Assembly: GCA_051294905.1 (NCBI GenBank)
Contig: CM119385.1
Location: forward strand, 8,494,001 to 8,558,000
Direction of reading: 5' to 3'
Source of the DNA: Botryllus schlosseri
Taxonomy: Eukaryota
DNA length: 64,000 nt
Shown here piece by piece: positions 1 to 47,079 of this stretch. The position numbers and the translations under genes were made by a program. The notes below the pieces were generated by a model, which did not search any database, was not told the DNA's origin, and worked only from the letters and a program-made list of their open reading frames with translations. Numbering within the stretch: the first letter of the stretch is position 1; each line of letters opens with the position of its first letter.

Positions 1-3000
1 TCTGGCTTCTTTGACACGCTTCATCGAATTTACCAATCCCGTCCCATTTAACGGTGAATCGGTAGTTAATCGTTAAAAGAACTGTTACGTTTGTAAAGCC
101 GTACAATATAGGAATGGGGTTTAAATGATGTACAATATCATGCTGCTGGTGGTGTACAATATCATGTTAAACCTCTCGATTTTTGTGATTTTTATCCAGT
201 TGAGCAAAATACCCTGTGCCTACAACTTCTAGAAGCTGAAAACCGCAGTTTCACCTTACCGTGTTGACCTGAATCATGGGTCTAACTTAAGAAAATGAGG
301 GAAACTCCACAAAATAAAGCAAAGGTTGAGCGCATCGGTTGTACGTAAACTCAGATCGCATTTTCTGGTGGAGTTCCGTCGTGTTCACATATCAGCTTGA
401 TAACAACGCTGTTGTAGGGGAAGAAGTCTATATAGAGCTAGCATGAATGTCTTTATTTTCCATATTTATAACTTTTTTTCATTTCTTTATAGCGTGGTTG
501 ACGCTGTGAAAGCTGAAAGATACAATGTAAATCTCGCGTGGCAAATTGATCTCGCGTGCCAGGGATTGCCGACTCCCGATCTAGTTGTCTATATAACCTT
601 CCGCAGGCTCGACACCGCGAACCTGGTGAATAACGAAACGTTTTGTATAAGTCATTGTCCAGAGATTAAATTAGCTTTGCGTTAAGAATGTGACGTCCCA
701 GGACCACACGCCTCTAATAGTCGACTCGTCGCACGTGCGTTACTGTGGTGGTCCAAGACCTGCAGCGTGCAGGCTTCGGACCCAATATAGAATTGTGTTT
801 GGAATATTCCAGTCCAACAGTGATAGCTGATTGCCATGTTAGAAAAACGGTGGTATGTTCTAAAAAAATAATATGTCACTCCTATACCTAGCGCCACGTG
901 ACCACGGCATCACTGTATCCAGTTGAATATCATGATCATATCGCCATAATTATGTCTGTGTTACAAAACTTACAATGTCGTGTATACTTTTGTGTATATA
1001 CTGGTCGAAGTTTCACAAACTTATTTTTCACACCACGCAGCGCCGTTACAGTATACGGTATGTACTCGATACATTTATGCATGACACACGGTTGTCAAAA
1101 TGTTCCTAAAAGCATGTACGATATGCTATAGGCTAATTGTGGTACAGCGTAACTCAGATGTCGCCGAATGAATCTTCGTAGGGATCTCTATCTGAGCAGC
1201 TTATAATCAGAGTTTCCTTATGATAGCGATAACCCTGTGCGAGCCGTGAGAAACTCGATGCGACAAAGGTAGATCATTGAGCGTTCCATGAAGTGAAATC
1301 TACCCCAGCCTAATGGGAATAGTTCGGATAGACTTCCCTCGCCAAAACTTCCTCACATGAAAGACAGCCGCTTGGTTTCTGTGCCATTTATATTGTCGCT
1401 GCTTTGTCATTGACCAAGGTAGAGCTTTGATGTCGCGATGTAGTCAAATGCACAATGGCACATTTAAATTTTCACGCTGCCAGACTCCGGTTCGTGTAGG
1501 AAATGGCCTAATGCACACCGAAGCCGTTTGACGACTGTCTCCGAGAGAAAGGGGGACGGCGTTTTAAAGCGAAAAGCATCAAGGTCGTAACACGCACTCC
1601 ATAAATATCTGTAAATTGATGCAAGGCGCATAGTAGGAATTTTTGCCGCAGTGCAGTAACGACCCGTTTGTTTGTACTTGGAGTTTAGCGGCAGTGCAAT
1701 ATGCAAGATGATTGGCCATAAACAACGATCTGCGTTATGTTAATTCATGTGAGTTGACACTGGAAGTTATTTGCGAATGACTGAGAATTCACAGTACTGT
1801 CAAAAGACACCGACTGATAAATCATGGGCAGAAGTCGGGCGAGTGTCTAACGTGCAAACAGCGCGCTGTTTCAACTGATGCTCTAGATGCGTAGAAACAA
1901 ATAGTGCTACAATCGGGGACTTTTTATTCGTTATTGGTGCAAATACTTCGTTAATGAGATATAAAGGTGGAATTGTATCGTGCCGCATGCCGTCATTACT
2001 TTTGTCATAACTGCAAACTAACCAACCCCGCCGCGGTGACGAAAGATTAGATATGAGGACATTAGAAGACATTTGACACCAAGATGAAAAAAGTATCCAT
2101 CCAGTACCCGCCTTGCTACCTCTTTTATCATAAGCATACAAATATTTGTCCTGACGAAGTGATTAGGGATGATTTAAAGAATTCAAACAGGTAAACGAAA
2201 ATACAGTAGTTGGTTGTGAAACGGTGACGCGCGGGAAGTTTGATCATCGAGACAGTAGTGGGAGAAGAATCAGGCTACCGCGTGACAGTTCCTGTTCAGC
2301 TATATCTGCGATTTCTGATAGAAAGGGCCCGCTGGAAAGAAAGAAAACGATTAGCTTCACTAAAACAAAACTCAGACCAGTGAGTTCGCAGTGATGTCAC
2401 AGACGACCACAGTAACTGCTATTGCTGGAGATGAAAGAATGCAAGAAGGGTACCCAGTAATTAGCATACACGCAAGACCTGGACGCGTAGGGGAAAGTTT
2501 GGCATAACAAATTACAACATTTATTACTTCAAAGAGAGTCAACAATGGTATAAACAATATCTGGGCATCGACGATTATCTGCAAATCGAAGATTGCATCT
2601 CGCAATGTGCGTTTGTAAGGGATGGTGAGTAGTTGCAAGGGATGGTTTAGATAGGGCGAAGCATAGCTTATATGCAGCTGAACTTAACGAAATAAATTAT
2701 GATGTTACAGATGTCATGGTCAGTACCAGGGGAACTTCCATATATCATGTATCGGCCTATAATTATAATTACGTCTGTTGTCGCTGGCTTTTGTATATCA
2801 TTCGCGGTACAAATGACATTCTGCGAACAATAATACTTTCTTTGGTGCAATATGATGGCCATCGCGCTTTCGAAACGTCGTTTATTTGGACTGCAGGCTA
2901 ATATCTTTGATGTGCCGACATGCCAAGTGAATTCTAGAAATGTGTTTGTATATCTGACATCTATAGATTGGCGCTGATTAGTGCGCAAACAGGCATATAT

Positions 3001-4216
3001 CTATCATGAATATTTATCATTATATATACCGGCTAGTTACTCAAATGTTCGTTACACTTTCCTAAATTTGCGAGCTTCGCAGGTAAACATTTGGTAACCC
3101 CGCCATTTGTGGGCTGGCTTACGAATCCAGTAATTCGATATCGCTATTTCTATGGTATAAAATATTATGTTTATCTCTAATTTCTATGGTTAAAGACATG
3201 TCATTAGGACCGAGGTGTAGATTTTATGTGAGTGATATATATGTCTTATTTAATAGCAATGATATACATCACGAAGATTTACGAATATTATTTTTGTTAC
3301 TGTCTTGTCTAATTTCGGAGACTACAATTTGAAAACGGCTGATCGTTTTTGCACGATTCGTGAAGAGCACATGCAGAAGCAAGATTCAAAAAAGGTTCAA
3401 GCCCTTTTTTGCCATAGGTACTACTAAGGAATATTATAGTTTTGATAAAAAATGGGCCTGATGAATCAGCGAATTTTATACGCGATTGGTTATTTTATTT
3501 GATTCATTCGTAAGTTTTTCGAATACGCGCGACTAGTTATTAGATTTACTAGTGACAGAACGCAATCACTTTCAATAACGCTATCGTGCAGCTGAACAGA
3601 TACCCCACAACCTATTCTGAAACGGGCAAGATATCCGTCTTCGTAGTATCTTATCTGTCGTATTCAGGCGGGCATATTCTCCTAATGATGTAGATCTAAT
3701 GAATCATTGTTACAGTAGTAACTATGTGTTTGCTTGACAACTTATCATGAAATGTCCGTCAGAATGAAGCAGGCTACACATTTAGTGGTATCGCTATAGT
3801 CCAAGTGTAACTATTTTCTCGTCGCATAGACCGAGCTCCGTTGCAGGCGCATCCGTTGGTATGCGCTAAAGCCCCGTACACGGTGTACGTACGTGTTGTA
3901 CACCTTTGGCATTTTCAATTTTTAATATGCTGTGGATCATCCGAACTGTAACTGCCAGTGCAATTGAGAGGCCATCTTTATAGTTTTTGATTGTGATGCG
4001 TTCCTGTGTCGTATCCGTCGACGCAGCCTAGAATACTGAAGCGCTCTCCCACCTCTTGGACATTTTGAGACTTTGAAATGATTGGGACTGTATTTTCATG
4101 TCTCAGCTAATCTGAGATATCGATTCATTTCTGTTTACTACACACTTCCGCCAAGCTGCTTCTAACTAACTATTCTTAAAATATTTTTGATCATAGATTC
4201 TGCACACATGCGAAGA

Positions 4217-7200
4217 ATGATTTGCTACTCTTATGACAAGTCGGATTCAGTGTCAAGCAGCATCGACAAGCACCCTCAGCACATTCCGGTCACTGCAAAC
4301 CTATCGGATCTCGACGAGCACAGCCCAGATTCCACTGCTTCGACGAGCTACTCAACAAATTACGAAATGGTGAACGGTCCGACATCGCAACGATTGAATT
4401 ATCACGTCACAGACGCGTCTACCTCGGTACCGAACGACCACGGTCGTCAGTTATATTTCCCTCAGTCCAATCAAGTTAGTCACGAAGTTACCAGAAATCA
4501 CAACAATGAATGGAAAGACAGTTCAATGTATACTTATCCTGGGGTTTACAATCGAATTCACAACGACGGGGCAATTATGCCAGGCAGAGGTCGGGGCTGG
4601 GATGTCCACGCGGAACTTTTTCAGTACGGCAACCCGAAACAGTTTTACTCTTCGTATCCACCCGAAATGTACGCCCCGTCGCGCCAACAGCATTACGAGA
4701 CCTCGCGGCGTAATCACGCAAGTGCAACCAATGCAAATGGACAATATTTACAAAGACATCCACTTGGACCTTCAGCGGATCGGAGTTATCCATTGGAATC
4801 GTCCACAACAAATTCTGTTACTTCGCAACGTTACCCGTACGACTGGATAAACAAAAACTCTTACGCACCTTGTCCACCACCTGGTAGGTGTTTTTTGACA
4901 TATCTCCAAATCTCCTTCGCCTGTCTTATTGAAATATAATAGAAAGTTAGTTCGGTTGTAATGATATCGTAATGACTTTTATGTGCTGGAATCAGCCACT
5001 CGTGGTCATACTCAAGAGAGGATTGCAAACGGTGGTTCTGTTTACAATGTAATAACACTGATAGCACCGCGAAAGCAATTCATTATGACGACTTGATTCT
5101 CGTCAATTCGCAATGAATAACATATCAGCGGTGACAGCTATGCCCTTCCTTTTTGTAATTCCCGATGAGGTTTCGGTTGGTAAAGTTATTGATTCACTTC
5201 ACAAATATACCAATAAATGTTTAATAAGAAAAACCTATTTGAAAATCATTATAATTTGGCACGATTCATTTGACTGCATAAAAGATGATAGGTACTCCAA
5301 TGACGCATTTGTAACGTCTCTCACGAACATCTGGCTGGTGCGGGTGGCTAAAAAGTTTGTACCAAAACGAAAATTGATTCGCAAATGAGTAAAAAGACTA
5401 AAATGTGCCTAAATTTTGTTGTCACGTACCTATGCGGGGTTGGGTACTAGTATAATTGATGTCTTTTGATTAGGGCGATTTTTTACTCAAAAGACGGAAT
5501 ATTTTGACCTAAAAATGAGAATTTTGACATGTTCTGACGTTCAAAAACTTGATTTTGCCCTCATGTATGTAACTTCGGCGTTTTCGCACGTAATGTTACA
5601 ATTGTACTATACTTATCTTCATTTCTGGTTGGAACTGTCTGTCCTTACGAAGTAGTTTGGCCTGAAAAAACTTATATACTTGAAAACTGACAAGTTTTTA
5701 CATGAAAAAACTTTATTTTAACGAAACGTGGACCTATGAAGAATTTTAGTAGTTGCATCACGCTTTATGGCAGAAATAGTTCGTTGTAGTACAATGAAAG
5801 ATAATTTCGTAGATTCTCGGGTAAAAAGAGTCTGTCCTAAGAATGGAGAAAGAACGTTCAATAGCAGCAGTTGTTCGCTGGAAACACTGAAGTTATGCGT
5901 GCGTTCCTGGTGACACACCGTGTTCCTTCATCCTGACAATGTTGTCTACATCACAATTTTTCATCATGTGCTTCTTGATATAAGAACTAATGTCTTGCTT
6001 CAGTTAGGATATTGCGGTACGTTGAACATACCACCATGTCAACCTTTTTGTTTAATTTGACCGTTTATGATTCACAATAAGACAATGGGCCGTCTTCAAC
6101 GGTGCGCCTATAAAGTAGGCTACAAGATGTAACATGTAAAATGATAAGTTCGCCGACAGAGCAAACATCTACGATACGAACGAAACACAGGTTGCAACAA
6201 AATTTTTATTTTGTAAACAATTTTGACAATTTTTTGAACAAACTACAGTTTTTACAACATTTCAACTTGTTTTGCAATGTCAAAAAAAATCGCTCTAGCT
6301 ATGATGCATAATAGCTCGTACAATGTGCATGTAGTTCAATTTCCCTTATCCCTAGAAAAAACTAATATACTTAATACACTGTTTATACGCCATTTTACTC
6401 AACGATGGCAGTGTTGGTACAACATCAAGTAGATGAGAACGTATCTAGTGGGAAAATCACAACCGGGCTGCGGTTATTAACCCTTGCTATATATATATCG
6501 TTATTGTTTCCATTGAAAGCCACAATTACAGTATTTTACTGAATTTGCTGAGAGCTAGAATGCCTAAAGGGTCATAGTCCTGGTATAAGTTGAGTATAAG
6601 TGAAATCTGAATTACATAAAACCAGCCAGTTCGGCATAACGCAGACCAGTTTTTAAGTGCGAGTCATACGACACGGGGTACATGGTACACGCGTGTTGTA
6701 GTGTTACTTACTATTACAATATTTCAACCGCAACATTTGTTTACATCAAAATTAAGATCATCCAATCCCTTCCTGTTCTATCGACATACAATGATTAAGC
6801 CGCTTGATACATCTGTGAATACTACTGCTATGATAGGAATATATTTCAGGCAGCATGTATAATTTGTTTCCTCAAAATGTAAACAATAATCATCGACACT
6901 AGCAATTTCGTTGGCCGTTGACAGTTGTTCTTAAATGAATTGTGTTGGGCATGATAATTTGATTATTGCGGTGAGATGGTTCTTTGACACGGTTCTTACT
7001 TTCGGACTATATCGAGCAAAATATAGAGACCGCAATCGAACGATTTCATAGTCGCGTTTTTGTGTGACGATTCCGACCCGGAATAGACCACGCCAGCTCG
7101 TGATTCAGCATAAATCAAATGAGTTTATAATTATTCGCTGAACTTACGATGAACGGCATCCGCCATTTTGATACACACGTCGAAATCGATGGGAATTCAT

Positions 7201-39350: not shown

Positions 39351-40301
39351 TATTCGTCTTCTCTGTTCCACAAAGTTTACCGATTGAGGTGCAAATTGTC
39401 CGAAAAGCAATGCACTATTCCTCGTAGTATCGCACACTTGTAGCTGTCGCAGTGACGATTGGGCAGGTATTACATCAGGAGTAATTCCAATCGCCTTTGA
39501 TTAGTGCTATGACTTCCGATTACGTTTGGAAGTATCATCTATCCATGCTGGGCAATGGTTTCACGTTTTCCTGTCCTGACCTCAAAATGTTGTTTGCTGA
39601 CTTTCAAATAAGCTTTTTATTGTGATGAATGATCATTCTCTCTCTTTTCTGTAAATTGTTGCCGATATGGATTTGATTGAATAACTTAAACGAAGATTTG
39701 CTAAGACAACTTGAAATGCGGTTGTCCTATTGCTGATTTGCTGCAGCAAGGGCCACCTAAAATCATGTGCATGTTTTGCGCGCAAGAGCAAGTCTTGAAT
39801 GAAATAAAAGTAGGCTTGCAGTATATAGTTTATTATCGATGATGAATTGGCGCAGGACCCAGACTACTAAACAATAATATGCTCGCATAATGAATTGAAA
39901 TTATAGATCCAATGAACACTTGAAACTACGCAGCAATTAAATTAAATAAAAGACACGAAGTGATTGGTATACCGATAAATTGATATATTGAGACCATATA
40001 CTCCGGATTTGAGCTACATATGCAAGTCCAAGTTCAAATCCTGTATTACTTTTGTGCCGTAGCATGCCCGAATATAAGTCATCCAGATCTCCGGATACGA
40101 ATCCAGATATTCGTCCGCCTGCATTCCGAAGTGTAACTCCAATTTTACCGCGAACTCCATGTTTCCTGCAAAAATGGGAGAAAAAAGGTTGAATGTCTCA
40201 AACAATATTGCAAGTTTGCAAAATCGACTTTCTCGTGGTTCCTATTGGTATTGCACTACTGGTAAATGATAAATGCTCTTCGCGCATCTTTATTGTTTCA
40301 T

Positions 40302-40313
40302 TATGACGTCATA
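40302..40313. promoter_or_regulatory. Palindromic CRE/ATF site (TATGACGTCATA) ~80 bp upstream of the TM/coiled-coil gene ATG
   Basis: 12-bp palindrome containing TGACGTCA in the divergent TNF / cTAGE5-like intergenic region; function inferred. Confidence 0.4.
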
Positions 40314-40393
40314 GTGGACGTGCTAAATGTAAAAATTCATGAAATATCTACAATGCATCAACATATTCCAATACCGCGAACTCGAAAGCAAGT

Positions 40394-43300
40394 ATGCCTC
40401 GATACTGTCGAGTAAAATCTGAAGCGTTTTCTTCAAATGAAGGGCTACAAGGAACGTATCGAGGTGTATGCGAGTCTGTAATACCCCTTTTGGGAATCGA
40501 CCCCGGGAGCGACGAAAGTGAAGAATCATGGATAGCATGGATTTCGGATATGCTAGTGGCCTTTCTTGACCCCAACTCGTGCTTCTTCCAAATATTTGTT
40601 TTATTCTTAGTAGCAGGAGTCTCCTTCATGCTGGGGGTATACTTAAGGTAGGGAGTGGTTGGCAAATATTTTGCGATTATGAATGTAGCTTCTATTTTGA
40701 TCTGTGATGTGAAGGAAATCAGATAGGCTAATACTTCACTAATCCAGACTACTTCTCTTTCTGTGTAGGCTTACATATAAATTATAATGTGTGCGAATCT
40801 TCATTTCCCATAATAACAATAATGATGATAATTGCACTATATTAGCAGGGAGATATGTCACTCAGAATTTTTTCCTTTCGTGTTTGACGTGATCTGACAG
40901 GATGCCAAATTAACACGGCTACAAATTACAGGCGTCATACAATTCTGGGACTACTCCGTCAGAAAGAAGAATGGATAGATAAAGAGAAAATGCTCTTGAA
41001 CCAGCTTTGGGCAGCGCTCGAAGAGAAACTGGAGGCAAAATCGATGATGCAGGAATCAAGAACGTCTTTAGATAAGGTCAAAGGTCAGTGTTTCGTTCCA
41101 TGTCACTTCACTGACTCATCATCTGTATAAGGCTCTTCACACGAAAGTCAAGTAACTTTCTTGACACATAGGCTAAAATCGTGCACTGCTACTATTTTCC
41201 TCCGGATAAAGTATTTATTATACAAGCGACAACATTTCAATAAAAGGGATCTTGAATCATGAGCAGTTGAGCACAATCCTAATGAAACATAAGCCACCAT
41301 CGGCGCTATGTGCTATTGTTTCCATAGTAACTATTGTTCTTTGCCGTGCTTATACTAGAGTCGTTTTTTTCTGAGAATGAGCTCTGAGATTGTCAAAGGC
41401 ACGAGAAAAATATATGAGATGGATGAAAAATTCAATTTATTAGAGACTTATACTTCCAGGAACTGGAATAATTCAGATAATAATCTATATAGTCATCGAC
41501 AGTACTTGGTTTAGCAGAATATTGTTGACAAAATGATTAAAATCTGGCGCATTTCTTACCGTACCGTAGATTTCCAGATAAATTCGGGTCTTCCACGTTC
41601 ATAGCACTAAGATATACGGTAGAATAGCAATGTGAAATTCGATTTTACGTGGAAATTCAAGCGGAGGCTTCGAATCTGTGATTATCCGTACTGGTGACCA
41701 TGGAAGTGCTACTCGACTCTCCTCGATTCGGGGAAGGATGGCCCAAAGATTTTACCTTGGACGAATTCATAAGTACTACACCCGTTCAACGGAAACCGGT
41801 TCCGAACCACCTCACCGACACGAAGATTTTCAACAGCGCTATAAAGAAAAATGCACTTATCAAATGCGATCCCACGGTTATCCACTTTCCCGGGTTCAGT
41901 TTGGGCAAAACGCAGAAAAAAAAGTTCAAGATATGTAACTCATCGTCGGAAAGACAAAATATGCACATCATCAGTCCATCTACCAAGTATTTCACTATAA
42001 AGTATACAAAGCCAAGAAGATTCGTACCGGGATTTACAATGGATGTTACTGTTCTATTTACTCCCGACGAATGGAGATACTATTACGATTGCATCAGATT
42101 ACATTGCGAAGGAGAAGAAAACATTATGATACCGCTTCACGCTTATCCTATCATGGACCTATCCGGTTTTCCTGATAAAGTAATTTTTGATACTGCCAAC
42201 TCGAGACTCGGCAAAACGCGCAGAAAGGTTCTATCTTTAAAATCCCCGCATCCGGTTGATTTCGAGTTTAAAATCAACCTCATTCAACCCCATCCGTCAT
42301 TTACTGTGAGCCCGTTATCAGGGACTGTACCAGGCGAAGGTGAAACGATCGTATCAGTCGTGTACACCCCTACCGAGTATGTTACTTCACACATGACAAT
42401 GCAGCTGAAAGTATCTGAATTTAATTCAAAACCACTCACAACTTCAGTGATAGCCTGTTGTGTTCCGAATCCGCGTGTTAAGTCTGTTAAAGAGGGCGAT
42501 GAGATGTTCAAAAAAACAAAAATTTTAGACCCACACTCGCTATCATTAGTGCAAATGTCACGTCGTAGAAAAACAGCCACCCCTCAACCGCCTACCAGAG
42601 ACGGTATTGAACACGAAGGACTGTATTTCCCAACACAGATCCATTCGCAACACGCAGTCAACAGCGTGTTAATACAGAAAGCCGGTAAGTTACGCGCAAA
42701 AGACATGAGAGCGGCGTCGACCGCGAGACTTGCGAGCGTAGCAGGCCGCGAGTCCACGACTGGCGTCGGCCAAATGCAGTCTTCCAGACAAATGAAAGAA
42801 GCCGCTTTCAAGCAAGAGCTGACGAAAGACGAAATCGAAGAGCGTGCTAATCATTTGAGATGGCAAGTGCGTCGTGGAAGCCCCGCGATCACGCAGGAGC
42901 AGCAATTGGACGCGTTACGTGAACGCGAAAGAGCAGAGATGGACTACAAGTATCGGCGACGATGTGAGCCTGATGCTGACGCTGAAATTCGGCGCTACAT
43001 GACGTTCAAAGCAATGCGAAGGACTTTCCGTAAAACACACAGCATCCCAAACACCCCGCCCAGTTTTGACTTGTACAACGACAACCCGTGGTTAAGCAGG
43101 CATCGTGCTCTGGAGAGATTTCAGCAAGCGGCACGAACGGTGTTAATTCGAAAGAGGGCGGATAGGAAAGTGAAACTGTTACGTACCATGATCGAAAACT
43201 TCAGCAACGGAAAGCTAGAACAACAACTCTCTGCTGAAAGCTCGGCACAGCTACACCTTGACGTCCGTCCCACGTCCACACCTAGCGCGTCAAATCGCAA

Positions 43301-46244
43301 TGTCGGAGTGCGATTCTCGATATCAGCTGCTAAAGTGAAGCCGTTCACGTTTCCTGTTTATGTCGAGTCGGAGACAAAAGGTAACGTCACCGCTACTGAA
43401 ATCGCGGAAGTCGAGTCGATACCTTCCGCTATCGCATTACGACAAGATATTCCGTTCCACCACCTCAAAGTACCAAAACAGTACACTATGTTGGGATACG
43501 GAAATAGCGATGTGGATCAGGCAGCTCGCAGTTACGTAGGCACCGGTATCTCTTGTACTCTAAGAGGAGGCGCTGACGATGAAATAATAGAAGTTTCCGT
43601 TCCGATGCATCTTTTGCCTGTCCAGGAACAGAAGGCTCCCGGATTAAGGAATGAGCAAGACAGCAGACCCGAAAGTAAAGAGTCGATGGTAGCAGACTTT
43701 GAAAACGACACCCATCTGGCTACGTCCGGGGTTAACATGCCTCCAGAATTATTATCAAACCCACCACATCACCCGTTGCGAATCTTTAATCCATTCCCTG
43801 GCATGCAGACTGTATATTTGCCGTTTAATCAAAGCGAAGTCGACCCGGACTATCACCTGTGCCCCATACCAAGGTATACAGTGCTGCCGGACAGCGAACC
43901 GTATTATGACAAGGACGACGTCATCAAGGGATTGATGGCGTGGAAAAAATTCCCATCACAAGGTATCGTAGCGCTTTCTAAAAATAACGGTACCGTGTCG
44001 AGTAATTGTCTGCCGCGGTGGTCTGATTGCTTCGGAGAAAGCATGCTGCCGACTGTCACCCCTAGTTTGCTATCGCCACCCACAGTGCCTCATGAAGACC
44101 CACCAGATTTTGGCACTTCTGCCGATCCACTGGAGTTAACTCCGGAAATGGTGAGAGAAGAATTTAAGGTTGTGGAATATGAGATTGCGATAGCGGCCAG
44201 AGAGGAGGAGGATGAAAAGGAATACAAAATTCCAGAAGCGCCGAGGCAGACTGATAACCATGACAACGCGCTCCAATCCAAGATTGCAGAGACGCTGGAG
44301 AAGTTTGAAGATTTGGACAAGAATCAGCCCAAACTGTATTACTCTTAAGAATTATTCCATATTTGAATACATGTTTTATGTAGAGAACTATTCTATTTCG
44401 CATTTTCGCTGCAAGTAAATGTTTGAAATGCCTTCACAAAGCTTTACTCAAAACGTCGAAGTAACAACGGGAAAGCTGAGCCTTTATTATGATTATTGTC
44501 AGTTCGCGAGCTACATAATTGGAGATAATTTTAGATTGGTATTCATTGTAGTGGTGCGGAAGAATATAGAATGACTGCCACAGGCGTAGCGGCGCGCTGA
44601 GGTATTTTTCAATTTGATATCTAGATCGTTCGAAGTGTCGCATAAATACGTCGGTGTGTATGTTGAATACAGCGGGACCAAGGATATTTGTTATTAGTTT
44701 GTAGGGGTTCCGTCTAGTTTATGATTATGTAAAGTCGGTCACATTAATTTGGTGTGTTTCAATTCAAAGCATAATTCGTTTTACGAAAGGATACTCGCTG
44801 TACTTTAGATTATGAGTTGTGATGGGTCATTCCACGATAATTCTGAAGAAGTTATAAATCTCGGATGTGCATTGATGTCACATGGCAAAGTTGTTTATGA
44901 CAAAGTTGTTGGGTGAAAATTGATACGGGAACACAATTACGTCACATTGTTTAAAGCCAAAATCGTAGCAAGGATTCCCTCAATATCCCCGTCGGAATTA
45001 TGACTTTCTCGTTCTAAGTATAGAGTGTTTTCATTATTTTTTTTCAGATTCGTAAATATTACATTACATATTAACATTACATAACATTACATTATTAACA
45101 TTTGTGGTCAGAAGTTATTCCGGGAAGGAAGTGTCAGATTCATGAACAGCACTCACTAGACAGCCAGTACCGGTGCTAAAGCTACCTTTCTAAAAATGCG
45201 CAGATTGTTTACGCTACATCTTGCGACTCGACAAGTACACAAGGCGTTGCCTACGCCAGGACTGAGGAAACGGTTATCGTTACCTCCGACTCCGGACAGT
45301 TTCAACATACCGACTCAAACTCCGCAAACACCGCGACTCCCAATATTTTATTCACAGAACCCCAACATTCTAGTAAAAGTACTCAAAAGACGATAAGTTT
45401 TTCACATTTTCATTTTTTTATATTGACCAAGCGAAGCGACCTCCAGCATTCCGGTAAATTCGCTCATAAAATTATACGTTTACTACATTTTAGTCACTAG
45501 TATTACCATTAGAACCGACGAATTTTTTGGATTCAAAAATTGTGCTCGCCGAAAGAAATGAAAGTTGCGAAGGTCCCTTATTCATGCACAAAACTTTAAA
45601 ACTTCTGTAACTGCAACAGCACTTTATAGTAACATTTGAGAGCACTGGGTCCTAATTCGAAGTAGCTGGACTCGGAGTCAGAGAACTTCAACAAACAAAT
45701 GTGCTCCCCCGAATTCGACTTATTATTACAAAGTTCATGTGACTCCGACTCATCATGAAAAAATTTAAGGAAACTTCGACACCACGACTCTGAATCTAAA
45801 TCCCGAACTAAAATGAACTCTTATTAGCATCACTGGCAACTTCATCGATGTTTTGTTTACAGTTGAGTTGGATTCGGAGCGATCCGAGAAAGAATCGCTA
45901 CAGGCCCGCTTGTGGGGAATGGAGCGAAATGTCAAAATTATTCAATCGGAAAGGGACGTGATGGAAGAAAAATTGCGAGACTGCATCAGCTCGTTTGCGG
46001 ATCTGAGGAAAACTATTGGAAAGGTAGACTGTCTGCGCCCTACATGAAGGGGTAGACCTTATTTCGCCCATGACCACCTAATTTTGTTTATTTTTAGAAC
46101 ACCGCCGGTGGCGAAAACACAGACGTGTCCTCTTGTATGGAGAAAATAAAAGGCCTGCAAGTACTGCTCCAGAAACTCATCGAAGCACACAAACAAGAGC
46201 ATCTGAATTTTATATCTATGCTAGAAAAGCAACCGTCCGTATAG
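40394..46244 (+). CDS. Membrane-anchored coiled-coil protein, tentatively cTAGE5/MIA2(TANGO1)-like; exons 40394-40647, 40932-41083, 45863-46023, 46098-46244
   Basis: Exon 1 has two hydrophobic stretches (WIAWISDMLVAFLDP; FFQIFVLFLVAGVSFMLGVYL) and ends TTA AG|gtaggg. Exon 2 (cag|G CGT CAT) reads RHTILGLLRQKEEWIDKEKMLLNQLWAALEEKLEAK and ends phase 1. Exon 45863 starts phase 1 (ELDSERSEKESLQARL...) and the terminal exon ends KQPSV*. The KEKML..L.A.LEEK segment after the TM resembles cTAGE5. The 5' start and any extra exons are uncertain. Confidence 0.6.
41318..41331. promoter_or_regulatory. RFX X-box upstream of CFAP221
   Basis: GTTTCCATAGTAAC matches the X-box consensus GTHNYY-AT-RRNAAC and lies ~370 bp upstream of a ciliary gene ATG. 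Confidence 0.7.
41700..44348 (+). CDS. CFAP221: Cilia- and flagella-associated protein 221 (PCDP1), single-exon ORF, 882 aa
   Basis: Uninterrupted 2.65-kb ORF with PVPNHL..KIF, IHFPGF, FVPG...VLFTPDEWRYYYDCIRLHCEGEENIMIPLHAYP, PVDFEF...HPSFTVSPLSG, RHRALERFQQAARTVLIRKRA and KKFPSQG, matching my recollection of CFAP221 across most of its length. Confidence 0.93.
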   Translation: MEVLLDSPRFGEGWPKDFTLDEFISTTPVQRKPVPNHLTDTKIFNSAIKKNALIKCDPTVIHFPGFSLGKTQKKKFKICNSSSERQNMHIISPSTKYFTIKYTKPRRFVPGFTMDVTVLFTPDEWRYYYDCIRLHCEGEENIMIPLHAYPIMDLSGFPDKVIFDTANSRLGKTRRKVLSLKSPHPVDFEFKINLIQPHPSFTVSPLSGTVPGEGETIVSVVYTPTEYVTSHMTMQLKVSEFNSKPLTTSVIACCVPNPRVKSVKEGDEMFKKTKILDPHSLSLVQMSRRRKTATPQPPTRDGIEHEGLYFPTQIHSQHAVNSVLIQKAGKLRAKDMRAASTARLASVAGRESTTGVGQMQSSRQMKEAAFKQELTKDEIEERANHLRWQVRRGSPAITQEQQLDALRERERAEMDYKYRRRCEPDADAEIRRYMTFKAMRRTFRKTHSIPNTPPSFDLYNDNPWLSRHRALERFQQAARTVLIRKRADRKVKLLRTMIENFSNGKLEQQLSAESSAQLHLDVRPTSTPSASNRNVGVRFSISAAKVKPFTFPVYVESETKGNVTATEIAEVESIPSAIALRQDIPFHHLKVPKQYTMLGYGNSDVDQAARSYVGTGISCTLRGGADDEIIEVSVPMHLLPVQEQKAPGLRNEQDSRPESKESMVADFENDTHLATSGVNMPPELLSNPPHHPLRIFNPFPGMQTVYLPFNQSEVDPDYHLCPIPRYTVLPDSEPYYDKDDVIKGLMAWKKFPSQGIVALSKNNGTVSSNCLPRWSDCFGESMLPTVTPSLLSPPTVPHEDPPDFGTSADPLELTPEMVREEFKVVEYEIAIAAREEEDEKEYKIPEAPRQTDNHDNALQSKIAETLEKFEDLDKNQPKLYYS

Positions 46245-47079
46245 TAGCCTATCGTGAGCAATTAATATAGGAATAAATCCATCGCCATTGAAATTCCGAC
46301 ACAATATACTCGAATATAATTCCCGCAAAGTTGCAGCAAACGAGCAGTGATGTCTTATCGAGTGGATATCGATATAGCATAGTTGTTCCGTTCTGACGGA
46401 TCAACGTAGGAGCAATCGGACATATACAGGGGATAGTATGAGCCGTATACAGACATACGGCAGGCCTATATTTCACGTTGGACAATATCTGGCGGCTTCC
46501 GTTAAGCTCGTCAGAGACCAGAGAAACAAATCGAAAGTTTATGATCACTAAATGCAATCATTTAATTACTTTCCCGTGATCGCTTGCTTGCTACGAGTTA
46601 GAAACCTCCACCGAGAGAGAGCAAACTAAGTGATGTAGATCTGAACCCAGACTGTTGATCTCAGTCACGAAATATTAGCATATTCAAGTTGTGTGATCAC
46701 GATCAGCAAGGCAGCATATCCTTATAGGCTATTCGTTCCAACGATCCGTTAGGCCCGGGTTAGGGTAAGCAAACAAGCTCAAGTTGATGACCGTCTTCTT
46801 GTATTTAAAAGGACTGGGTATTATTGCATTGGTTATCAGTCACTTATCTGTGCTCGCTTGACGGGCAGGATCTGGTAACGATGAAATTGTGCAGCCGACA
46901 AAGGCCACGGGCGACATTCATTGGATTTCGGTACTGTTCTGTAGATGCGACGGGAATTGGAATAATGTATATATCACTTTTGCGTTCCTTTGATCACTTC
47001 ATCAGCACCGCTCGATTCCTTGATTGGTGGATAATCCGAGAATTATCAACGAAGAACTCAAATAACTCCGCTTTTACTA

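What the first reader, a model, noticed from the sequence alone, without database searches (positions are those of the whole stretch)
41084..45862. Complete intronless CFAP221 nested, same strand, inside an intron of a TM/coiled-coil host gene
Seen: an 882-codon uninterrupted CFAP221 ORF lies between a phase-1 donor (41083) and a phase-1 acceptor (45863), whose flanking exons join into one continuous coiled-coil frame. Known: CFAP221 is a multi-exon central-pair (C1d) gene in vertebrates, and the neighbouring genes here are intron-rich (27 exons in the kinesin). Inferred: this is a retrocopy that landed in a host intron and stayed intact, possibly replacing the parental locus. Same-strand nesting means the host must splice across the nested gene's promoter and 3' end, which could couple or oppose ciliogenesis and host-gene expression.
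Basis: partly seen in the sequence, partly recalled or inferred. Interest (0 to 1): 0.78.

Follow-up and report, generated by a model that had tools for sequence, protein, structure and literature searches.

The report
Old intronless CFAP221 retrogene inside host intron
This sea squirt's only copy of the cilia gene CFAP221 is an intron-free retrocopy inside an intron of a small membrane/coiled-coil gene, an arrangement also found in two related sea squirts and therefore ancient, which makes it a tidy but not surprising case of a retrogene replacing its parent.

Summary
An 882-codon CFAP221 ORF (41700-44348, +) lies in a 4,779-nt phase-1 intron (41084-45862) of a four-exon, 237-aa TM/coiled-coil gene. 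Spliced transcript contigs from two studies skip exactly 4,779 nt. CFAP221 has its own transcript (about 41594 to 44440/44850) and its own 3' end.

Retroposition is supported, but it is old.
- Ciona and Clavelina CFAP221 have 21 and 20 coding introns. Nineteen positions are shared between them and 11-12 with amphioxus.
- In both, the gene sits between Nup35 and an ankyrin gene, with no host exons nearby.
- Styela clava and a third stolidobranch-like species (L005) have a single-exon CFAP221 in the same host intron as here.
- This genome has one CFAP221 copy and no remnant near Nup35.
- Synonymous sites are saturated (pS 0.78-0.86) against pN 0.13-0.33, so the gene is constrained.

In L005 the nested gene is antisense to the host. 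In Styela the intron is 38.5 kb. Same-strand geometry is therefore not required, which weakens the coupling idea.

An RFX X-box lies upstream of the ORF in all three species, suggesting an independent ciliary promoter.

This is an "orphan retrogene" nested in an intron: a new member of a known kind. The scan noted the X-box on this window before (s1-234329).

The parts
40394..40647 (+). Host gene coding exon 1. It holds the conserved start MPRYCRVK and the single transmembrane helix, and ends in phase 2.
   Evidence: Frame and donor CTTAAG|gtaggg. X1 spliced contig has a joint 40645->40930, GT..AG at cut +2. Colinear with the Styela and Ciona orthologues.
40932..41083 (+). Host coding exon 2 (start of the coiled coil). 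Ends in phase 1 at donor AAG|gtcagt.
   Evidence: 80-85% identical to the L005 exon.
41084..45862 (+). Host intron 2 (4,779 nt, GT..AG, phase 1), which contains the whole CFAP221 gene.
   Evidence: A joint skipping exactly 4,779 nt in contigs of X1 and X15. The orthologous intron holds CFAP221 in Styela clava and in L005.
41318..41331 (.). RFX X-box GTTTCCATAGTAAC, 382 nt upstream of the CFAP221 ATG and about 260 nt upstream of the first transcript coverage.
   Evidence: It is the only match to GTHNYYATRRNAAC in the 64-kb window. A match also lies upstream of CFAP221 in Styela clava (L002 9123-9136) and in L005 (2649-2662).
41594..44847 (+). CFAP221 transcript as covered by X1 contigs. The start region is about 41544-41594. 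The main 3' end is near 44440, and a longer form reaches about 44850.
   Evidence: X1 contigs cover 41594-44847, with nothing at 41146-41543. X23 raw reads fall only in 41544-44528. The X21 3'-tag read peak is at 44131-44528. No joints lie inside it.
41700..44348 (+). CFAP221 coding sequence: 882 codons plus stop in a single exon.
   Evidence: pN 0.13-0.33 against saturated pS 0.78-0.86.
44414..44419 (+). AGTAAA, a candidate poly(A) signal of the nested gene.
   Evidence: Read from the sequence. It lies just upstream of where the 3'-tag reads of X21 stop. This is an inference.
45863..46023 (+). Host coding exon 3 (coiled coil). Acceptor ttgtttacag|TT, ends in phase 0.
   Evidence: 87% identical to Styela and L005.
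46098..46244 (+). Host coding exon 4, with the stop TAG at 46242-46244.
   Evidence: Joint 46021->46096, GT..AG at cut +2, in X1 and X15..

Best explanation
A processed (cDNA) copy of CFAP221 inserted into intron 2 of a small, conserved, uncharacterised TM/coiled-coil gene in an ancestor of at least three stolidobranch-type ascidians. The copy stayed functional, the multi-exon parental gene was lost, and the retrocopy is now the only CFAP221. This makes it an orphan retrogene.

Today it appears to work as an independent single-exon gene inside the intron. An RFX X-box about 260 nt upstream of the transcript start region probably drives it in ciliated cells. It ends at its own poly(A) site about 1.4 kb before host exon 3. 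The host pre-mRNA is transcribed through it and spliced 41083|45863 to give the 237-aa protein.

Shown here: the nesting, host splicing across it, a separate CFAP221 transcript and 3' end, a single genomic copy, the intron-rich state at another locus in Ciona and Clavelina, conservation of the nest, and purifying selection.

Inferred: the cDNA route, the X-box as the working promoter element, and the loss of the parent after the insertion.
For: - There is one CFAP221 match in the 495-Mb genome.
- The Ciona gene has 21 coding introns and the Clavelina gene 20. Nineteen positions are shared between them, and 11-12 are shared in position and phase with amphioxus, so the introns are ancestral.
- Both genes lie beside Nup35 and an ankyrin-repeat gene. 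No host exon lies within 10 kb of either.
- Styela clava has single-exon CFAP221 inside the annotated 237-aa gene LOC120341411, in the same intron and on the same strand.
- L005 has single-exon CFAP221 inside the same intron of an intact 238-aa host, on the opposite strand.
- The tree places window+P0001 beside Styela, with L005 outside them. All lie in one clade, sister to Ciona/Clavelina/Phallusia.
- pS is 0.78-0.86 (saturated) and pN 0.13-0.33.
- Spliced host contigs and a separate CFAP221 transcript and 3' end were found.
- An X-box lies upstream in all three species. The pattern occurs once in the 64-kb window.
- Nup35 in this genome is on another chromosome-scale contig (C2), with no CFAP221 remnant in 50 kb around it.
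Against: - No retroposition scars remain. There is no poly(A) tract and there are no target-site duplications, as expected after this much time, so the cDNA route is inferred from total intron loss plus relocation.
- A retrocopy normally arrives without its promoter, so the X-box needs a separate origin. No strict X-box was found upstream of the Ciona or Clavelina genes for comparison.
- The Ciona host locus could not be fetched, so an empty orthologous intron was not shown directly.
- The X1 and X15 runs are not on record as RNA. Their RNA nature is inferred from contigs that lack three introns.
- One X15 contig runs unbroken from host exon 2 into the CFAP221 ORF (41056-43390). This may be pre-mRNA or DNA, but it leaves a host-driven transcript open.
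Confidence: 0.8

Rival explanations
1. Two-step DNA route. CFAP221 first lost all its introns at its original locus by recombination with a cDNA, keeping its own promoter. A DNA-level rearrangement later moved the gene plus promoter into the host intron.
For: The nested gene has an RFX X-box upstream in all three species, which a promoter-less retrocopy would have had to gain. Synteny is scrambled between this genome and Ciona/Clavelina: Nup35 is on C2, and the ankyrin-repeat query gave only a weak match on C10.
Against: It needs two rare events instead of one. No strict X-box lies upstream of the Ciona or Clavelina genes that could have been carried along. Simultaneous loss of about 20 introns together with a new location is the usual signature of retroposition (established knowledge; orphan retrogenes, PMC3548309).
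Confidence: 0.12
2. Recent, lineage-specific retrocopy in this species.
For: None beyond the intronless state.
Against: The same intronless gene lies in the same host intron in Styela clava (58% protein identity) and in L005 (51%). Synonymous sites are saturated even against the closest relative. There is no parental copy.
Confidence: 0.02
3. Coupled expression. CFAP221 is at least partly made from host-promoter transcripts, either by intron retention with intronic polyadenylation or as an operon-like unit. Under this reading the nest is kept because the two genes regulate each other.
For: One X15 contig is continuous from host exon 2 (41056) into the CFAP221 ORF (43390). The nest has been retained over a long time in three lineages. 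Tunicates are known to resolve polycistronic transcripts by SL trans-splicing (established knowledge).
Against: In X1 and in the X23 raw reads nothing covers 41146-41543, between host exon 2 and the CFAP221 start region. In L005 the gene is antisense to the host, so it cannot share a transcript there. Intron length and the gene's place within it vary from 3.4 to 38.5 kb. A gene inside an intron is hard to remove without damaging the host, so retention needs no function.
Confidence: 0.08

Closest known systems
Orphan retrogenes (retrocopies that replaced their parental gene; Ciomborowska et al. 2013, PMC3548309)
   Same: It is an intronless functional copy at a new location. The parental multi-exon gene is absent from the genome, while outgroups keep the intron-rich gene in conserved synteny. 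The copy is under purifying selection.
   Different: This one is in tunicates, concerns a structural axonemal gene, dates to an early stolidobranch ancestor, and is nested in a host intron. No scars of retroposition remain.
Nested intronic genes (a gene lying within an intron of another gene, common in animal genomes)
   Same: The whole gene, with its own start region and poly(A) end, lies inside one intron, and the host is spliced across it.
   Different: The nest is conserved between species whose synonymous sites are saturated, yet the orientation differs between lineages (sense here and in Styela, antisense in L005). The guest is an essential-type single-copy gene rather than a young duplicate.
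CFAP221 / PCDP1 / FAP221 (central-pair C1d projection protein of motile cilia; role taken from established knowledge, not tested here)
   Same: It has the same length class and N-terminal Ig/ASH-type domains. It is full-length colinear with CFAP221 of animals from cnidarians to vertebrates and groups with tunicate CFAP221 in the tree.
   Different: Gene structure only: 0 coding introns against 20-21 in Ciona, Clavelina and amphioxus.
RFX/X-box-controlled ciliary genes
   Same: A 14-nt match to the X-box consensus GTHNYYATRRNAAC lies upstream of the gene in all three species examined.
   Different: RFX binding and dependence were not tested. Distance to the ATG varies (160, 382 and 865 nt). The element must have arisen or been recruited inside a host intron.

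Membership tests
CFAP221 / PCDP1 orthologue | Full-length sequence similarity to named CFAP221 proteins, which are the best hits | tested here: met
   named hits are CFAP221/PCDP1 or unnamed products, with none named as another family. Examples are Styela clava (58%, 100% coverage), Ciona (46%) and amphioxus (40%), and hits extend to vertebrates with E down to 1e-113.
CFAP221 / PCDP1 orthologue | N-terminal Ig-like / ASH (Cep192-, CFAP65-, CFAP74-type) domains | tested here: met
   PF24507 (4.6e-13), PF15780 ASH (5.6e-11), PF22073 and PF24771 are above their cut-offs at residues 53-254.
CFAP221 / PCDP1 orthologue | Single orthologue that groups with the species' relatives in a gene tree | tested here: met
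   One genomic match. The tree places it within a tunicate clade, sister to Styela (100/100 and 98/95 support).
CFAP221 / PCDP1 orthologue | Location in the C1d projection of the central pair, and calmodulin binding | not testable with these tools
   Needs proteomics or cryo-ET of axonemes.
Retrogene (processed copy) | Lacks all the parental introns | tested here: met
   There are 0 coding introns here, in Styela and in L005, against 21, 20 and 20 in Ciona, Clavelina and amphioxus. Of those, 11-12 positions are shared across chordates. No joints lie inside the transcript.
Retrogene (processed copy) | Lies at a different genomic location from the parental gene | tested here: met
   Ciona and Clavelina have the order Nup35 - CFAP221 - ankyrin gene. 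Here the gene is in a host intron on C15, while Nup35 is on C2.
Retrogene (processed copy) | Poly(A) tract remnant and target-site duplications | tested here: not met
   No A-run follows the 3' UTR and there are no flanking direct repeats. Only short chance-level inverted repeats were found. Loss of these marks is expected given saturated synonymous divergence, so their absence does not exclude membership.
Orphan retrogene | Parental gene absent from the genome | tested here: met
   The six-frame search of the whole assembly finds only the window's copy. No remnant lies in 50 kb around Nup35. The search scores only the best candidates, so a badly decayed remnant cannot be excluded.
Nested intronic gene | Host exons on both sides are joined in mature RNA | tested here: met
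   a joint skipping 4,779 nt in X1 and X15. The X1 contig joins all four coding exons.
Nested intronic gene | The guest has its own transcript ends | tested here: inconclusive
   Coverage gaps on both sides in X1 and X23, and a 3'-tag peak in X21, support it. Depth is low, contigs cannot show ends, and one X15 contig links exon 2 to the ORF.
RFX/X-box target gene | X-box consensus close upstream of the gene | tested here: met
   one site upstream in each of the three species. Background is about 1 site per 50 kb in the loci scanned.
RFX/X-box target gene | RFX binding and RFX-dependent expression | not testable with these tools
   Needs ChIP or a reporter assay.

The most novel reading that the evidence does not exclude
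The nest is not merely frozen but functional. Part of CFAP221 expression would come from host-promoter transcripts that retain the intron and end at the nested poly(A) site. Alternatively, the nested poly(A) site and promoter would tune how much full-length host mRNA is made. Either way, ciliogenesis and the uncharacterised TM/coiled-coil protein would be reciprocally regulated in sense-nested lineages, and this link would be lost in the lineage where the guest is inverted.
Probability: 0.08. Interest if true: 0.6.

Novelty: new member of a known kind. Interest (0 to 1): 0.38.

Why it matters
This is a clean, datable example of an axonemal gene that appears single-copy in this genome being replaced outright by its retrocopy. 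The retrocopy then stayed inside the same host intron while synonymous sites saturated, the intron length changed tenfold, and one lineage inverted the guest.

It could be used in three ways.
- As a rare-genomic-change marker for stolidobranch phylogeny.
- As a natural experiment on how a promoter-less copy comes to have an X-box.
- As a sense-versus-antisense comparison for transcriptional interference in nested genes.

It does not change what is known about CFAP221 or about retroposition.

Tried and rejected
- **Host gene family.** Pfam finds no family for the single exons or for the full-length orthologues. Neither sequence search returned a source name more telling than 'uncharacterized LOC'. 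The protein atlas gave only sub-threshold leads to TANGO1/cTAGE5-like clusters (score 0.86). I do not file the host under any family.
- **Ciona host locus.** The exact-sequence look-up found no record, so the empty-intron test could not be done.
- **Parental remnant.** tblastn of five CFAP221 proteins against 50 kb around Nup35 gave only E of 0.25 or worse. Two queries coincided at L014:2598-2840, but the ORFs there show nothing CFAP221-like.
- **Ankyrin neighbour.** One exon of the Clavelina gene found nothing in this genome and another gave only a weak 31% match on C10. Synteny of that side is therefore unresolved.
- **Inverted repeats.** I looked for repeats that could explain the inversion in L005 or an assembly artefact. 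None flank the gene.
- **Rfam.** No RNA family matches in 40300-46400.
- **Loose-end consensus.** The loose letters at 40603 in X23 are not in the window. Since 98 of 100 X23 reads carry non-matching parts, they are probably library adaptor or linker sequence.
- **Contigs of P0005 and P0009.** One had no DNA available. The other is a 3.3-kb contig without host exons, probably a transcript. They are uninformative about nesting.
- **dN/dS.** No ratio could be given because dS is saturated in every pair.

Full report
**1. The observation**

The + strand carries one long ORF from 41694 (GTG) or 41700 (ATG) to 44348, 882 codons from the ATG. Its N-terminal 250 residues hit the Ig/ASH-type Pfam families found in CFAP221 (PF24507, PF15780, PF22073, PF24771). 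A search of 5.8 billion proteins returns CFAP221/PCDP1 from across animals. Full-length matches include Styela clava (58%), Ciona intestinalis (46%), Clavelina lepadiformis (44%) and amphioxus (40%).

**2. The host gene**

The flanks belong to a compact gene with four coding exons: 40394-40647, 40932-41083, 45863-46023 and 46098-46244. It encodes 237 aa with a conserved MPRYCRVK start, one TM helix and a C-terminal coiled coil.

The exon-3 peptide retrieved full-length relatives. These led to Ciona LOC100181668 and Styela clava LOC120341411, both 237 aa and both named "uncharacterized". The window's spliced product aligns to them without a gap, at 81% and 69% identity. The junction residues DKVK|VELDSE are identical in Styela.

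The family has no Pfam domain and no informative name. More distant relatives at 27-37% identity also exist, and their sources are unnamed. A language-model search gave only sub-threshold leads to TANGO1/cTAGE5-like clusters.

**3. RNA evidence**

All RNA evidence comes, with four runs of the same species laid on 40350-46300.

- In X1, one 663-nt contig joins 40423-40645, 40930-41077, 45857-46021 and continues past 46096. It is a spliced host mRNA.
- The aligner put that cut six bases left of the canonical site. The six letters on either side (TCAAAG and TTACAG) agree at four positions, and the piece carries two mismatches. This fits the canonical GT..AG junction, which also keeps the conserved lysine. 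I could not read the contig letters, so this last step is inference.
- CFAP221 is covered separately. X1 contigs span 41594-44847, with nothing at 41146-41543 and almost nothing at 44927-45722.
- Raw bulk RNA reads (X23) fall only within 41544-44528.
- 3'-tag single-cell reads (X21) pile up at 44131-44528, on the strand expected for a + strand mRNA. An AGTAAA lies at 44414-44419.
- No joint lies inside the ORF.

The guest therefore has its own start region and its own 3' end, and the host is spliced over both. One X15 contig runs from 41056 to 43390 without a break. This is either pre-mRNA or DNA, and it leaves a small opening for host-driven transcripts.

**4. Origin**

The genome (495 Mb) has a single CFAP221 match, the window's own.

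In Ciona the gene spans 12.4 kb and in Clavelina 8.3 kb. In both it lies next to Nup35 and a large ankyrin-repeat gene. Exact spliced mapping gives 21 coding introns in Ciona, 20 in Clavelina and 20 in amphioxus. Nineteen positions are shared between the two ascidians. Eleven to twelve are shared in alignment column and phase with amphioxus. The introns are therefore ancestral, and the intronless state is derived.

No host exon lies in or within 10 kb of the Ciona or Clavelina gene. In this genome Nup35 is on another chromosome-scale contig (C2). The 50 kb around it hold Nup35 exons but nothing CFAP221-like.

Loss of all introns at once, a new location and no parent are the signature of an orphan retrogene (PMC3548309, found). 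A search of the paper library for CFAP221 together with "retrogene" found only two unrelated papers.

**5. Age**

- In Styela clava the CFAP221 gene is a single 2,682-nt exon. It lies inside the annotated range of LOC120341411, in the same intron and on the same strand. That intron is 38.5 kb, and the guest sits 1.8 kb before exon 3.
- On a 14.4-kb genomic contig of a third species (L005, 51% protein identity) CFAP221 is again a single exon.
- In L005 the host exons flank it on the opposite strand. One and only one canonical splicing solution gives an intact 238-aa host protein, whose intron 2 (5814 down to 2417) holds CFAP221 antisense. No flanking inverted repeats suggest an artefact.
- In a maximum-likelihood tree the window and its closest relative (P0001, 77-78% by the measure used) are sister to Styela. 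L005 branches outside them. All form a well-supported clade, sister to Ciona, Clavelina and Phallusia.
- Synonymous differences are saturated in every pair (pS 0.78-0.86), while pN is 0.13-0.33.

The gene has therefore been under purifying selection for a long time. The insertion predates the split of these three lineages. Whether it reaches the base of Stolidobranchia is open, because the deepest member of the clade (P0005) gave no DNA.

**6. How it probably works**

The pattern GTHNYYATRRNAAC (RFX X-box) occurs once in the 64-kb window, at 41318-41331. That is 382 nt before the ATG and about 260 nt before the first transcript coverage. The same pattern occurs once upstream of CFAP221 in Styela (GTCACCATGGCAAC, 865 nt before the ATG) and once in L005 (GTAACTATGGAAAC, 160 nt before the ATG).

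Elsewhere in about 160 kb of loci the pattern occurs three times. Three hits in 2.6 kb of upstream sequence are therefore far beyond chance.

This supports an independent ciliary promoter inside the host intron. Binding and dependence are untested.

How a retrocopy came by an X-box is the main unexplained step. The motif may have arisen de novo. Alternatively the two-step DNA route may apply (in-situ intron loss, then relocation with the promoter). I give that route about 0.12.

**7. The coupling idea**

Four results weigh against it: the antisense arrangement in L005, the tenfold range of intron length, the independent transcript ends, and the abundant spliced host mRNA.

Long retention does not need a function. 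A gene inside an intron cannot easily be excised without harming the host, and the guest is the only CFAP221. I keep the idea as the novel case at about 0.08.

**8. Verdict**

The finding is a new member of a known kind: an orphan retrogene that is also a nested intronic gene. It has some value as a phylogenetic marker and as a natural sense/antisense comparison. Interest is 0.38.

Noticed in passing
L005:2038-6755 (Logan contig of SRR10746996): In this relative CFAP221 (2822-5476, +) is nested antisense in the orthologous host intron. Only about 340 nt and 405 nt separate it from host exons 2 and 3. The X-box lies about 230 nt from host exon 3.
   Followed up: yes
L009:3807-42300 (Styela clava OZ123525.1): The orthologous host intron is 38.5 kb in Styela clava, against 4.8 kb here. 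What else it contains was not examined.
   Followed up: no
window 40394-46244 (host gene) and proteins P0132, P0140-P0146: The host is a conserved, unnamed protein family of about 237-260 aa: MPR(Y/T/L)C start, one TM helix, a coiled coil and a conserved LWAALEEKL...WG(L/M)ERN(V/L)KI(I/L)QSERD core. It has no Pfam family. Relatives at 27-37% identity come from unnamed sources, probably other invertebrates. The atlas gave weak leads to TANGO1/cTAGE5-like clusters (score 0.86).
   Followed up: partly
window 45180-45800: The 3' part of the host intron carries several scattered copies of a CGACTCC / GACTCCGA-like motif on both strands, and a short low-depth contig in X1 (45318-45462). It may be a decayed repeat element.
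   Followed up: no
window 40603 (run X23): 98 of 100 laid X23 reads fit only in part. Four reads share about 97 loose letters before 40603, whose 30-nt consensus is absent from the window. This is probably linker or adaptor sequence of that library rather than an alternative exon.
   Followed up: partly
window 41056-43390 (run X15): One X15 contig runs unbroken from host exon 2 through the intron into the CFAP221 ORF, and X15 covers nearly the whole intron. This is either unspliced pre-mRNA or DNA in that run, and its kind is not on record.
   Followed up: no
G000:C2:11979936-11984354: Nup35, the neighbour of CFAP221 in Ciona and Clavelina, lies on another contig of this genome. The ankyrin-repeat gene that flanks the other side in those species was not detected in the 50 kb around it.
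   Followed up: partly
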